The notes beneath the pieces were generated by a model that saw nothing but the letters and a program-made list of their open reading frames with translations, had not been told where the DNA came from and did not search any database. This document shows, one piece after another, positions 40,223-60,223 of a stretch of 64,000 nucleotides of DNA. Every line of letters begins with the position of its first letter. Positions within the stretch are counted from its first letter, which is position 1. A program made the position numbers and the translations under genes. The stretch covers positions 248,001-312,000 of the IMG/VR virus record IMGVR_UViG_3300042923_000569; one strand, written 5' to 3'.

Positions 40223-40305
40223 AGCGGAATACAGGATTCGAACCTGCGTAAACTATTCGCCTCTTGCTTGGAAGGCAAGTGCTCTACCAACTGAGCTAAT
40301 CCCGC
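40223..40305 (-). tRNA. tRNA-Gly(UCC) with long variable region
   Basis: CTTGC-CTTCCAA-GCAAG; U73; 15-nt variable region AGGCGAATAGTTTAC. Confidence 0.88.
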
Positions 40306-51389: not shown

Positions 51390-51513
51390 TGGCGGCGAGT
51401 ACTGGATTCGAACCAGTGACCAGGACATTAAAAGTGTATGAGTTATGGTTGCTGCGGGAATCCAATCAGGATTCCTTGGGTTCTACCTGCTCTACCAACT
51501 GAGCTAACTCGCC
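51390..51513 (-). ncRNA. tRNA-Lys(UUU) interrupted by a 48-nt GAAUC/CAGCAA module (RNA I)
   Basis: Removing 51438-51485 gives a 76-nt cloverleaf with GGACA-CTTTTAA-TGTCC and CCA. Confidence 0.88.
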
Positions 51514-53692: not shown

Positions 53693-53803
53693 TGCAAGGT
53701 GCAGGATTCGAACCTGCGTTACGTTCTTGAAATGAAAGTTATGTATGCCGTAAGATTCCATCTGGAATCGCTTTTCGTGTCCTAACCACTAGACGAACCT
53801 TGC
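53693..53803 (-). ncRNA. tRNA-Glu(UUC) interrupted by a 39-nt GAAUC/CGGCAU module (RNA J)
   Basis: Removing 53737-53775 gives a cloverleaf with CGTTC-ATTTCAA-GAACG and a Glu-type D-arm TCGTCTAGTGGTTAGGAC. Confidence 0.85.
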
Positions 53804-57815: not shown

Positions 57816-58265
57816 TTAGTAAGTACTTTCTAAAGGAAGAAAAGAGCTAGCGTTCTCGCTATGCAAGTCGCTCATTTTTCCCCAAAAGGACATTGAACCT
57901 GCGATTCCATAACCAGCAGAGAGCATACCTGAAAAATTAGACTTAATCAAGCGTTTATTCATTTCAGTATAAAGTTTCTTACCATAACCCATACCACGAA
58001 AATCAGGCTTAATATAAATTTGGATATTGGTATCGAAATAACTCCAACGATATTCTTCATTATGGAAAACTACACCAATGTTATTACCTGTATCATCCTG
58101 GATAATAATTAAATCCGAGGATACAGCAACATCTTCATCAAAAGTTATATCCTGAAGACAACTAATTAATGTCCAAGCTGGAGATTCATAAAGTCCAGAA
58201 TCAATTGCTAGTTGTGCAAGTTGTTTAATGCAAAATTCATCAGTAGTTAATAATTTCATTACCAT
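57816..58265 (-). CDS. GNAT-family acetyltransferase
   Basis: IYIKPDFRGMGYGKKLY motif A; SFWGK. Confidence 0.85.
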   Translation of the reverse strand: MVMKLLTTDEFCIKQLAQLAIDSGLYESPAWTLISCLQDITFDEDVAVSSDLIIIQDDTGNNIGVVFHNEEYRWSYFDTNIQIYIKPDFRGMGYGKKLYTEMNKRLIKSNFSGMLSAGYGIAGSMSFWGKMSDLHSENASSFLPLESTY

Positions 58266-59374: not shown

Positions 59375-59587
59375 TTAACCTCTTTTACGACGCATTAATT
59401 TACGTAAAGCTAAAAATGGATTAGCTGGTTCTTTTACAGCTTCTTTTACTTTACCAAAAGATTCTTCTGAAAGTACTTTACTGTTTGTTTGAACGATTCC
59501 GGTAGTATTACAAGGATGACATTCATACATCATACCATCACCAGCATAATGCCAGCCATCACCATTACAAGAAGTACACTTATCCAT
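59375..59587 (-). CDS. small zinc-finger protein (CxxCxGxG)
   Basis: CTSCNGDG...CHPCNTTG. Confidence 0.7.
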   Translation of the reverse strand: MDKCTSCNGDGWHYAGDGMMYECHPCNTTGIVQTNSKVLSEESFGKVKEAVKEPANPFLALRKLMRRKRG

Positions 59588-59611
59588 GATAATCTCTCTT
59601 AATTAAAAGGG

Positions 59612-59721
59612 TGCATAAAGTAGGGTTCGAACCTACAAGGGAACCTCGCGGCTGCTCCCGAAGTCCTATCTTCGCTTTCGCTATTGTCGGACTCTCCGTT
59701 TACCAATTCCGGCATTTATGC
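59612..59721 (-). ncRNA. tRNA-Leu-like RNA with 22-nt anticodon loop
   Basis: Acceptor GCATAAA/TTTATGC-A, Leu-type D-arm, GAGTCC-[22 nt]-GGACTT, long variable arm, canonical T-arm. Confidence 0.8.
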
Positions 59722-59723
59722 AT

Positions 59724-59808
59724 TGGTGCGTCTGGTCGGACTCGAACCGACAAGCCATACGGCGGGGGATTTTAAATCCCCTGTGTTTACCAATTTCACC
59801 ACAGACGC
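59724..59808 (-). tRNA. tRNA-Leu(UAA), second copy
   Basis: GGGGA-TTTAAAA-TCCCC; CCA encoded. Confidence 0.95.
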
Positions 59809-59890
59809 TTTGTTCATCTTATATAAGTGTAGGCGTGTTCCGACGACCTCGTGTTAGTTGCTCGACATATTATGTCGCTACCTTTAGTGC

Positions 59891-59977
59891 GGCGGGTAGA
59901 GGGAATCGAACCCCCGTAGCGATGAAACGCATTGACTAAGCTAGCACGTCAATTGAGGTCGCCAACCTCATACCCGC
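59891..59977 (-). ncRNA. atypical tRNA-like RNA (long D stem, 11-nt anticodon loop)
   Basis: GCGGGTA/TACCCGC, GAGGT-TGGCG-ACCTC, ATTGAC-GTGCTAGCTTA-GTCAAT, GGGGG-TTCGATT-CCCTC. Confidence 0.75.
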
Positions 59978-60021
59978 ATCGATAATCGATGAACCACTAA
60001 AGCTCACTTATATTTTAAATT

Positions 60022-60098: not shown

Positions 60099-60173
60099 TG
60101 GTGCCCCTGACAGGATTCGAACCCGCGAATCACGGTTTTAGGGACCGCTGTTCTACCATAGAACGGCAGGGGC
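60099..60173 (-). tRNA. amber suppressor-like tRNA (CUA)
   Basis: GCGGT-CCCTAAA-ACCGT; full cloverleaf and CCA; C8 and C33 are non-canonical. Confidence 0.75.
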
Positions 60174-60193: not shown

Positions 60194-60223
60194 ATTATAC
60201 CACAGTTTTTCGAGCCGTTTCAA
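60194..60223 (-). promoter_or_regulatory. WTGAAAC-type phage promoter
   Basis: TTGAAACG...TGTGGTATAAT upstream of the CUA tRNA. Confidence 0.78.

What the first reader, a model, noticed from the sequence alone, without database searches (positions are those of the whole stretch)
59612..59721. Leu-type tRNA body with a 22-nt structured anticodon loop
Seen: all arms intact, A73 and a long variable arm, but the anticodon loop is GACAATA-GC-GAAA-GC-GAAGATA. Established: LeuRS largely ignores the anticodon, so this RNA might be charged yet unable to decode. Inference: a non-translational aminoacyl donor or decoy, reminiscent of the T4 species I/II RNAs.
Basis: partly seen in the sequence, partly recalled or inferred. 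Interest (0 to 1): 0.62.

Follow-up and report, generated by a model that had tools for sequence, protein, structure and literature searches.

The report
Anticodon-less leucine tRNA mimic in phages
A giant phage, and an unrelated small phage of the same plant-associated bacteria, carry a conserved copy of a leucine tRNA whose anticodon loop has been rebuilt into a rigid hairpin, so it cannot read codons and probably acts as a tRNA look-alike of unknown purpose.

Summary
On the minus strand at 59612-59721 lies a 110-nt RNA gene with intact acceptor, D and T arms, A73 and a long variable arm. A 6-bp stem carrying a 22-nt structured insert replaces the anticodon loop. It is not chance and not decay. 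Eleven distinct versions exist, in Rak2/CBB-like jumbo phages and in N4-like Erwinia phages. All helices keep pairing through compensatory changes (14 of 30 pairs), while the insert and the variable-arm tip are almost invariant. The body is closest to tRNA-Leu, and every E. coli LeuRS identity element is invariant. No excision of any length restores a normal anticodon loop. Gene finders give orthologs four different "anticodons", so it is not an intron-bearing decoder. The two 7-nt strands of the insert follow the pattern of the bacterial 5S rRNA loop E, and the central cross-strand pair covaries, which suggests a continuous non-Watson-Crick rod. My best reading is a neofunctionalised tRNA-Leu paralogue. 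It would be matured like a tRNA, be probably chargeable, be excluded from decoding, and act in trans through the rebuilt arm. Expression, charging and the partner are untested. It shows no detectable homology to T4 species 1/2 RNAs. I rate it a new variant of a known kind, of moderate to high interest.

The parts
59612..59721 (-). whole tRNA-Leu-like RNA gene (110 nt, G1 at 59721, discriminator A73 at 59612)
59715..59721 (-). acceptor stem 5' strand (pairs with 59613-59619); 5 of 7 pairs covary
59696..59712 (-). D arm: 3-bp stem plus 11-nt loop GAAUUGGUAAA, holding A14, A15, G18G19 and A20a (the Leu identity set)
59661..59694 (-). extended anticodon arm: 6-bp stem (59689-59694 with 59661-59666) enclosing the 22-nt insert
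59682..59688 (-). 5' strand of the symmetric 7x7 internal loop (GACAAUA)
59674..59681 (-). capping hairpin GC-GAAA-GC; the stem is invariant, the tetraloop varies (GAAA, UAAU, UUAG)
59667..59673 (-). 3' strand of the 7x7 internal loop (GAAGAUA); 59670 covaries with 59685 (A.G, G.A, A-U)
59639..59659 (-). long variable arm: 5-bp covarying basal stem, CAG bulge, near-invariant CC-GCGA-GG tip
59620..59636 (-). T arm (5-bp stem, loop UUCGAAC)
59613..59619 (-). acceptor stem 3' strand; the trailer after A73 is CCC-UUUU, so CCA is not encoded
59724..59808 (-). canonical tRNA-Leu(UAA) 2 nt upstream (after its encoded CCA); closest relative of the element's body
60194..60223 (-). near-consensus sigma-70-like promoter (TTGAAA-18-TATAAT, TG-extended) upstream of the tRNA cluster Sup(CUA)-Arg-remnant-Leu-element; a consensus match only

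Best explanation
The element is a neofunctionalised paralogue of a phage tRNA-Leu that no longer decodes. SHOWN: it keeps a complete L-shape-forming tRNA core (acceptor, D, T and variable arms, and all conserved tertiary positions) under compensatory evolution. The anticodon loop is replaced by a conserved 6-bp stem, a 7x7 internal loop and a 2-bp capped hairpin, and no normal anticodon loop can be recovered. It occurs once per genome, only in phages, always inside tRNA clusters. INFERRED: it is transcribed with the neighbouring tRNAs. RNase P and 3' trimming release it, and the host CCA enzyme completes its 3' end, as must also happen for about ten other tRNAs of this window that lack a full encoded CCA. 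Because every E. coli-type LeuRS identity element is retained, host LeuRS most likely recognises and charges it. The two 7-nt strands (both G-A-N-N-N-U-A) probably stack into a bacterial loop-E-type non-Watson-Crick helix. This would turn the anticodon arm into a rod about 15 layers long that cannot enter the decoding site and that offers a protein-binding surface. The RNA would then act in trans as a tRNA-Leu mimic with two functional ends. It would titrate or recruit a tRNA-binding factor during infection as a decoy or adaptor, rather than serve translation. Confidence in what it is (a conserved, structured, non-decoding tRNA-Leu derivative): about 0.85. Confidence in the decoy/adaptor mode of action: about 0.35. 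The figure given below is a compromise between the two.
For: Structure and selection: searches show 14 of 30 pairs with compensatory change. One search compares the window with the N4-like phage Fifi287. The 6-bp stem is 12/12 identical, the 7x7 loop 13/14 and the variable-arm tip 8/8. By contrast the acceptor stem is 8/14, the T stem 4/10 and the variable basal stem 3/10. Leu type: with the identity set taken from PMC9976931. Non-decoding: searches find no excision that restores an anticodon stem-loop, while the positive control is solved uniquely. One search shows ARAGORN naming orthologs Cys, Val, Arg and Tyr. Column 33 is C or U and always pairs with G56, so there is no U33. Loop-E pattern: the E. 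coli rrfH strands GAUGGUA/GAGAGUA compare with GACAAUA/GAAGAUA here. The cross-strand table has identical terminal G.A, A-U, U-A and A.G juxtapositions and a central A.G, G.A or A-U covariation. Phage-only and mobile. No protein is shared between the Fifi287 genome and this window. Contrast: the neighbouring tRNA remnant at 59885-59990 is not conserved. Context: promoter-like site and cluster layout.
Against: There is no direct evidence of transcription, processing, CCA addition or charging. The read data were assembled contigs; one 257-nt contig from a run only guessed to be RNA covers the element unspliced. The eleven sequences represent only about four or five independent lineages, so covariation counts are inflated by relatedness. 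The loop-E assignment rests on sequence pattern and one covarying position, not on a structure. The helix IV that L25 also contacts in 5S rRNA is absent. The Serratia BF lineage has a G.G mismatch in the 6-bp stem. Retention of the Leu identity set could be simple inheritance plus folding constraints. No partner protein was identified. Close relatives (GAP32, fHe-Yen9-04, Rak2-type coliphages) do without the element.
Confidence: 0.5

Rival explanations
1. tRNA-scaffolded hairpin. The business end is only the conserved rod, as a protein- or RNA-binding module. The tRNA body serves merely as a processing and stability chassis (RNase P, 3' trimming, nuclease resistance), as in engineered tRNA scaffolds. 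Leu identity is irrelevant.
For: The rod and the variable-arm tip are the most conserved parts, while acceptor and T stems drift freely. The same window holds two other conserved tRNA-like genes with different inserts in the anticodon-arm region, suggesting a general chassis-plus-module design. A 196-kb IMG/VR contig has a Leu-type tRNA-like RNA with a different long anticodon arm.
Against: A73, A20a, A15-U48 and the exact D-loop length are invariant although the acceptor stem turns over. A pure chassis would not need them, but this is weak evidence with few lineages.
Confidence: 0.2
2. The RNA is leucylated and, being invisible to the ribosome, supplies Leu to a non-ribosomal acceptor such as the host L/F-transferase or an unknown transferase.
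For: The LeuRS identity set is complete. The anticodon and variable arm are dispensable for E. coli LeuRS (PMC9976931). A small GNAT-fold ORF lies 1.3 kb downstream at 57816-58265, although nothing links the two.
Against: A donor role does not explain the sequence-conserved rod. No transferase co-occurs: no protein is shared between Fifi287 and this window. Ordinary Leu-tRNA is already available to such enzymes.
Confidence: 0.12
3. Degenerate tRNA-Leu pseudogene kept only as a punctuation signal. Its RNase P site frees the 3' end of the upstream tRNA and the 5' end of the downstream mRNA.
For: It sits 2 nt after the CCA of tRNA-Leu(UAA), or of the suppressor tRNA in BF and XbC2, and about 25 nt before an ORF. 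GAP32 has an ordinary tRNA-Leu in the same slot.
Against: Punctuation needs only an acceptor/T minihelix. It does not explain near-invariance of the 22-nt insert and the variable-arm tip across two phage families, or the transfer into an N4-like tRNA cluster between two tRNAs. A true remnant next door is not conserved.
Confidence: 0.08
4. Intron-containing tRNA gene. The insert is removed and a decoding tRNA results.
For: Annotators and ARAGORN in intron mode call it a tRNA with a 17-19-nt intron. These phages encode RNA ligases (PMC5259590). Another tRNA-like gene in the window does look like a tRNA-Lys with a 48-nt insertion.
Against: An exhaustive scan of single excisions finds no canonical stem-loop in any homolog with perfect pairing. 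With one mismatch there is still none in three homologs, and no shared anticodon. Predicted isotypes differ among orthologs. There is no bulge-helix-bulge. The insert is far too short for a group I intron and no Rfam intron family matches. One contig crosses the element unspliced, and no joint was seen at the element.
Confidence: 0.04

Closest known systems
Class II tRNA-Leu of bacteria and phages (Rfam RF00005), in particular the adjacent phage tRNA-Leu(UAA)
   Same: Cloverleaf, 3-bp D stem with GAAUUGGUAAA loop, A73, long variable arm and T loop. These are the best non-self hits of the family model (54.8, 48.5, 48, 47.8 and 54 bits).
   Different: The 7-nt anticodon loop is replaced by a 22-nt structured insert on a 6-bp stem. 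The variable arm is longer (21 nt) with a bulge. CCA is not encoded. There is no recoverable anticodon.
Phage T4 species 1 and 2 RNAs (rnaC, rnaD)
   Same: Stable small RNAs encoded at the end of a phage tRNA cluster with unknown roles (PMC3014915, PMC9697503). rnaC has an acceptor-like closing helix and a T arm.
   Different: No detectable homology: rnaC scores 15 bits through its T arm only, and rnaD has no match. They lack a D arm of tRNA-Leu type, and their architecture is different.
Bacterial 5S rRNA loop E (binding site of ribosomal protein L25)
   Same: A symmetric 7x7 internal loop with both strands G-A-N-N-N-U-A. The outer four cross-strand juxtapositions are identical (G.A, A-U ... 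U-A, A.G) to E. coli rrfH. The motif is described as symmetrical and fully non-canonically paired (PMC4408793).
   Different: The central three juxtapositions differ (C.A, A.G or G.A, A.A or A.C, against U.G, G.A, G.G). The adjoining helix is only 2 bp plus a tetraloop instead of helix IV. The geometry is not verified.
tRNA-like modules of tmRNA and of bacterial Y RNA (YrlA)
   Same: tRNA mimics that lack an anticodon and are coupled to another functional or protein-binding module.
   Different: Rfam gives a 13.6-bit tmRNA fragment only next door, at 59899-59916, and nothing for YrlA. The element has normal tRNA topology with its ends in the acceptor stem. It has no G3.U70, no tag reading frame and no Ro-binding helix.
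Intron-containing tRNAs (group I intron in bacterial tRNA-Leu(UAA); archaeal bulge-helix-bulge introns)
   Same: Extra sequence inside the anticodon loop of a Leu-type tRNA gene.
   Different: The net insertion is 15 nt. There is no intron core and no bulge-helix-bulge, and excision cannot rebuild an anticodon loop.

Membership tests
tRNA (Rfam RF00005), structural membership | Cloverleaf with 7-bp acceptor stem, D arm, T arm and conserved tertiary positions; score above the gathering threshold | tested here: met
   36.6 bits against a gathering score of 29 in the sensitive scan, although the default filtered scan and ARAGORN miss it. Covariation is seen in all arms.
tRNA, functional decoder | 5-bp anticodon stem with a 7-nt loop, U33, purine 37, and the same anticodon in orthologs | tested here: not met
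   The loop is 22 nt. The column equivalent to position 32/33 pairs with G56. No excision restores the loop. Predicted anticodons are ACA, GAC, ACG and AUA among orthologs.
Substrate of enterobacterial LeuRS | A73, A15-U48, G18G19 in register, A20a, and D/T-loop tertiary pairs (PMC9976931) | tested here: met
   All are invariant in 11 homologs. This is a sequence-level test only.
Substrate of enterobacterial LeuRS | A mature 3' CCA end and actual leucylation | not testable with these tools
   CCA is not encoded. Charging needs an enzyme assay or an acid gel.
Intron-containing tRNA | Removal of one contiguous segment gives a canonical anticodon stem-loop; a group I core or a bulge-helix-bulge is present | tested here: not met
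   where the positive control is solved. There is no Rfam intron hit and no spliced joint at the element in the contigs.
Bacterial loop E motif | Symmetric 7x7 loop with terminal G.A and A-U juxtapositions on both sides | tested here: met
   This tests the sequence pattern only.
Bacterial loop E motif | Non-Watson-Crick geometry, isosteric covariation throughout, L25 binding | tested here: inconclusive
   One covarying central position (A.G, G.A, A-U) and a C.A in place of U.G. The three-dimensional structure and protein binding are not testable here.
T4 species 1/2 RNA | Sequence or structure similarity to rnaC or rnaD | tested here: not met
tmRNA / YrlA tRNA-like RNAs | Match to the Rfam models; G3.U70 and a tag ORF (tmRNA); Ro-binding stem formed by the RNA ends (YrlA) | tested here: not met
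   No match over the element. Pair 3-70 is A-U, U-A or G-C. The ends form an acceptor stem.
Kink-turn | 3-nt bulge followed by tandem sheared G.A and A.G next to a canonical stem | tested here: not met
   By inspection: position 2n would be U, and the required G is replaced by A in the Kaldavass/XbC2 lineage.

The most novel reading that the evidence does not exclude
The element is one member of an unrecognised class of anticodon-remodelled tRNA mimics carried by jumbo, T4-like and N4-like phages. It is matured and leucylated like a tRNA but kept off the ribosome by a loop-E-type rod. It works as a mobile counter-defence or host-takeover RNA, for example by trapping a tRNA-binding host factor such as a tRNA-targeting immune effector, RelA or LeuRS itself. 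This would explain its horizontal spread between unrelated phages of Erwinia, Pectobacterium and Serratia.
Probability: 0.25. Interest if true: 0.8.

Novelty: new variant of a known kind. Interest (0 to 1): 0.6.

Why it matters
Phage tRNAs have recently been shown to counter tRNA-cleaving immunity such as PARIS, retron effectors, PrrC and Schlafens (papers listed). In all those cases the tRNA still decodes. A conserved, horizontally shared tRNA-Leu derivative that has given up its anticodon for a structured rod would be a different use of the tRNA fold by phages, one of pure mimicry. It would also offer a tractable relative of the T4 species 1/2 RNAs, whose roles have been unknown for fifty years. 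On the practical side, the gene is unannotated or mislabelled in GenBank as tRNA-Val, tRNA-Arg or tRNA-Cys. This distorts tRNA repertoires and codon-usage arguments for these phages.

Tried and rejected
(1) Intron hypothesis. I enumerated all single excisions between the D and T arms, with 0 or 1 stem mismatch and a shift of plus or minus 1. There was no consistent solution.

(2) Homology to T4 rnaC/rnaD. The covariance model run without filters, folding and Rfam all gave nothing beyond the T arm.

(3) Kink-turn, sarcin-ricin and SRP domain IV readings of the insert and variable arm. These were rejected on sequence variation.

(4) An alternative CCGA/UCGG helix across the insert. It is not conserved in the Kaldavass lineage.

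(5) Bacterial or prophage copies. Two genome-contig scans gave 0 hits and then 16 hits, about the number expected by chance. None had flanking stems or a model match.

(6) A co-transferred protein partner. All Fifi287 ORFs were compared with the window by tblastn, and only translated tRNA genes matched. The rest of the jumbo genome was not available.

(7) Expression and processing from public reads. Only assembled contigs were available. One contig from a run guessed to be RNA crosses the element unspliced, and a true metatranscriptome covers the neighbouring tRNA-Leu and ORF but not the whole element. This was inconclusive.

(8) A first variable-arm/T-loop pattern scan used the wrong spacing (11 N) and returned unrelated loci. 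The corrected scan recovered the known loci plus one distant analogue, L074.

(9) E. coli genomes: no similar DNA.

(10) Literature: no paper describing this RNA was found. The primary loop E papers are not held, so the base-pair geometries are cited from my own knowledge.

Full report
WHAT IS THERE

The window is part of a Rak2/GAP32/CBB-like jumbo phage. Its best DNA matches are Pectobacterium phage CBB and Yersinia phage fHe-Yen9-04. It carries 26 ARAGORN tRNAs plus further Rfam tRNA hits, all on the minus strand.

The reported element is the minus strand of 59612-59721.
- a 7-bp acceptor stem, then U8-G9;
- a 3-bp D stem with the 11-nt loop GAAUUGGUAAA;
- a 6-bp stem enclosing GACAAUA-GC-GAAA-GC-GAAGAUA;
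- a 21-nt variable arm;
- a T arm with UUCGAAC;
- discriminator A.

ARAGORN and the filtered Rfam scan miss it. A sensitive Rfam scan gives 36.6 bits against the tRNA model, whose gathering score is 29, with a 30-nt insertion in the anticodon arm.

IS IT REAL?

BLAST and exact-pattern scans recovered the element in several places:
- Pectobacterium phage CBB (93% identical);
- Serratia phage BF and six Erwinia pEa_SNUABM phages (80%);
- Erwinia phage Kaldavass and Xanthomonas phage XbC2;
- several metagenomic contigs;
- four N4-like Schitoviridae of Erwinia amylovora (Fifi067, Fifi287, Fifi450, Kuerle), where it lies between tRNA-Gln and tRNA-Ile.

Eleven distinct sequences were aligned as A3. 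On the structure I wrote down, 99.7% of cells are standard pairs and 14 of 30 pairs show compensatory double changes. No shuffle out of 500 reaches this, and sliding the partners drops pairing to 31-44%. RNAalifold predicts the identical structure on its own.

The pattern of conservation is informative. Between the window and Fifi287:

| Region | Identical positions |
|---|---|
| 6-bp anticodon-arm stem | 12/12 |
| 7x7 internal loop | 13/14 |
| variable-arm tip | 8/8 |
| acceptor stem | 8/14 |
| T stem | 4/10 |
| variable-arm basal stem | 3/10 |

The last three regions have turned over while staying paired. A tRNA-like remnant 170 nt upstream (59885-59990) is not conserved outside a 31-nt piece in CBB. 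This shows what real decay looks like at this locus.

Two scans of 185,579 species genomes gave nothing tRNA-like. The element is therefore phage-specific as far as these data go.

WHAT KIND OF tRNA BODY?

I built a covariance model from A3. It finds one copy per genome. Its next-best hits are all tRNA-Leu:
- the adjacent Leu(UAA), 54.8 bits;
- GAP32 tRNA-Leu, 48.5 bits;
- fHe-Yen9-04 tRNA-Leu, 48 bits;
- the window's Leu(CAA), 47.8 bits;
- T4 tRNA-Leu, 54 bits.

tRNA-Ser comes after these. Alignment with phage and E. coli leuZ tRNAs shows the same D arm and discriminator.

The published E. coli leucine identity set is A73, the A15-U48 pair, G18G19, A20a and the D/T-loop contacts. The anticodon arm and variable arm are dispensable for charging (PMC9976931). 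All of these positions are invariant in A3.

Synteny fits an origin by duplication of tRNA-Leu:
- GAP32 has suppressor tRNA, tRNA-Leu and then the ORF, with no element.
- The window and CBB have tRNA-Leu followed 2 nt later by the element.
- BF, pEa12 and XbC2 have the element directly after the suppressor tRNA.

IT IS NOT A DECODER AND NOT AN INTRON

I enumerated every single contiguous excision between the D and T arms. I asked for a 5-bp stem and a 7-nt loop with U33 and a purine at position 37.
- With perfect pairing there is no solution in any of the 11 homologs.
- With one mismatch allowed there is still none for the window, L018 or Kuerle, and no anticodon is shared among the rest.
- As a positive control, the same script finds a unique solution for another odd gene of the window, at 51393-51513.

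The column that would be position 32/33 is C or U and always pairs with G56. ARAGORN in intron mode names orthologs Cys(ACA), Val(GAC), Arg(ACG) and Tyr(AUA). That explains the contradictory GenBank labels.

The net insertion of 15 nt is far too small for a group I intron. It has no bulge-helix-bulge, and Rfam finds no intron or ribozyme there.

THE INSERT

Both 7-nt strands have the form G-A-N-N-N-U-A. So do the two strands of E. coli 5S rRNA loop E, GAUGGUA and GAGAGUA, which I read from rrfH. Laid antiparallel, the element gives G.A, A-U, C.A, A.G, A.A, U-A, A.G. Loop E gives G.A, A-U, U.G, G.A, G.G, U-A, A.G.

The outer pairs on both sides are the same. The central juxtaposition changes from A.G to G.A in the Kaldavass/XbC2 lineage and to A-U in Fifi287. 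It is never A.A or G.G. A natural variant in a public run changes only the neighbouring A.A to A.C.

The bacterial loop E is described as symmetrical and fully structured by non-canonical pairs, and it is the L25 site (PMC4408793). The pair geometries themselves (sheared G.A, reverse-Hoogsteen A-U) I cite from memory of Correll et al. 1997 and Leontis and Westhof 1998, because those papers are not held.

I therefore read the '22-nt loop' as a continuous irregular helix of about 15 stacked layers capped by a variable tetraloop. This is an inference. A kink-turn reading fails in the Kaldavass lineage. Helix IV, which L25 also contacts, is missing, so L25 binding is only a lead.

HOW IT PROBABLY WORKS

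A near-consensus sigma-70-like promoter lies at 60223-60194, upstream of the cluster Sup(CUA)-Arg(CCG)-remnant-Leu(UAA)-element-ORF. No terminator-like site follows on that strand. These are consensus matches only.

The element starts 2 nt after the encoded CCA of tRNA-Leu. RNase P cleavage at its 5' end would therefore also free the upstream tRNA.

Its trailer is CCC-UUUU, and CCU, CUU or ACA in other phages, so CCA must be completed after transcription. About ten of the other 27 tRNA-type genes in the window also lack a full CCA, so this is ordinary for this phage.

With the Leu identity set intact, charging by host LeuRS is plausible. A 15-layer rod in place of the anticodon loop is not compatible with codon reading.

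The most conserved parts are the rod and the variable-arm tip, so I take these as the functional surface. I commit to a trans-acting tRNA-Leu mimic (decoy or adaptor) as the most likely mode of action. My confidence in that mode is about 0.35, against about 0.85 for the structural and evolutionary description.

The rivals are scored in the report sections:
- a pure tRNA scaffold for the rod;
- a punctuation-only pseudogene;
- an intron-bearing tRNA.

No protein is shared between the whole Fifi287 genome and this window. The RNA therefore seems to move and act without a linked gene, at least within these 64 kb.

EXPRESSION

The only public data were assembled contigs. A 257-nt contig from a run guessed to be RNA spans 59579-59835 without a gap. 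A genuine metatranscriptome has contigs on the adjacent tRNA-Leu and on the downstream ORF. No joint at the element was seen. This neither proves nor disproves expression.

COMPARISON WITH KNOWN THINGS

The element is structurally a tRNA, but it fails the functional definition of one. It shows no detectable homology to T4 rnaC or rnaD, whose roles are also unknown (PMC3014915, PMC9697503). It is not a tmRNA, a Y RNA or an intron-containing tRNA.

I found no paper describing it. The CBB genome paper only says that 31 of 33 predicted tRNAs appear functional.

I class it as a new variant of a known kind, namely phage tRNA-like RNAs. Interest is moderate to high, given current attention to phage tRNAs in counter-defence.

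Noticed in passing
window 51393-51513 (-): A 121-nt tRNA-like gene (Rfam tRNA 47 bits, encoded CCA). Deleting 48 nt inside the 5' strand of the anticodon stem gives a perfect tRNA-Lys(UUU) stem-loop, GGACA/CUUUUAA/UGUCC. The split stem covaries in BF (CGACA/UGUCG), GAP32 (CGAGC/GCUCG) and fHe-Yen9-04 (CGACU/AGUCG, there with a GAU anticodon). It is conserved in all Rak2-like relatives and weakly in Vibrio KVP40-like phages. Annotations vary: tRNA-Lys, Phe, Undet or pseudo. It could be an insertion-bearing or spliced tRNA of an undescribed kind.
   Followed up: partly
window 53693-53803 (-): A 111-nt tRNA-like gene with intact acceptor stem, A73, D arm and T arm, and about 60 nt in place of the anticodon and variable region, including the hairpin GAUUCC-AGAU-GGAAUC. 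Only my family model found it (25 bits). It is conserved in the same jumbo phages and in dozens of Vibrio T4-like phages. Annotations vary: tRNA-Phe, Pseudo-AAA, OTHER, or none.
   Followed up: partly
window 59885-59990 (-): A tRNA-like remnant (acceptor GCGGGUA/UACCCGC and a T arm, with three hairpins between) lying between tRNA-Arg(CCG) and tRNA-Leu(UAA). It is not conserved beyond a 31-nt piece in CBB, so it is probably a decaying tRNA gene. Rfam gives a 13.6-bit tmRNA-fragment hit at 59899-59916.
   Followed up: partly
window 60102-60173 (-): A tRNA with anticodon CUA (amber suppressor type), Rfam 50.6 bits, missed by ARAGORN here. It is annotated as tRNA-Sup or tRNA-Pyl in related phages, and in those phages it lies immediately upstream of the element.
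   Followed up: no
window 40223-40305 (-): tRNA-Gly(UCC) is 83 nt long, with an unusually long (about 14 nt) variable region for a glycine tRNA.
   Followed up: no
window 59375-59587 (-) and 57816-58265 (-): The ORF directly downstream of the element encodes a 70-aa protein with two CxxCxGxG-type zinc-finger repeats (weak DnaJ central domain and GRXCR1/2 hits). It is also present in GAP32, which lacks the element. A 149-aa GNAT acetyltransferase ORF follows the second tRNA-Leu(UAA).
   Followed up: partly
L074 1069-1176 (-), IMG/VR contig of 196 kb: A single Leu-type tRNA-like RNA (47 bits against the family model) with the same D loop and CC-GUGA-GG variable-arm tip. It has a different long anticodon arm (about 11 bp with a 10-nt loop), a bulged acceptor stem and G as discriminator. 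It has no relatives in the phage collection.
   Followed up: partly
window, all tRNA genes: About ten of the 27 other tRNA-type genes have CAA or CUA instead of CCA after the discriminator, so this phage depends on 3' repair or CCA addition for many of its tRNAs.
   Followed up: no
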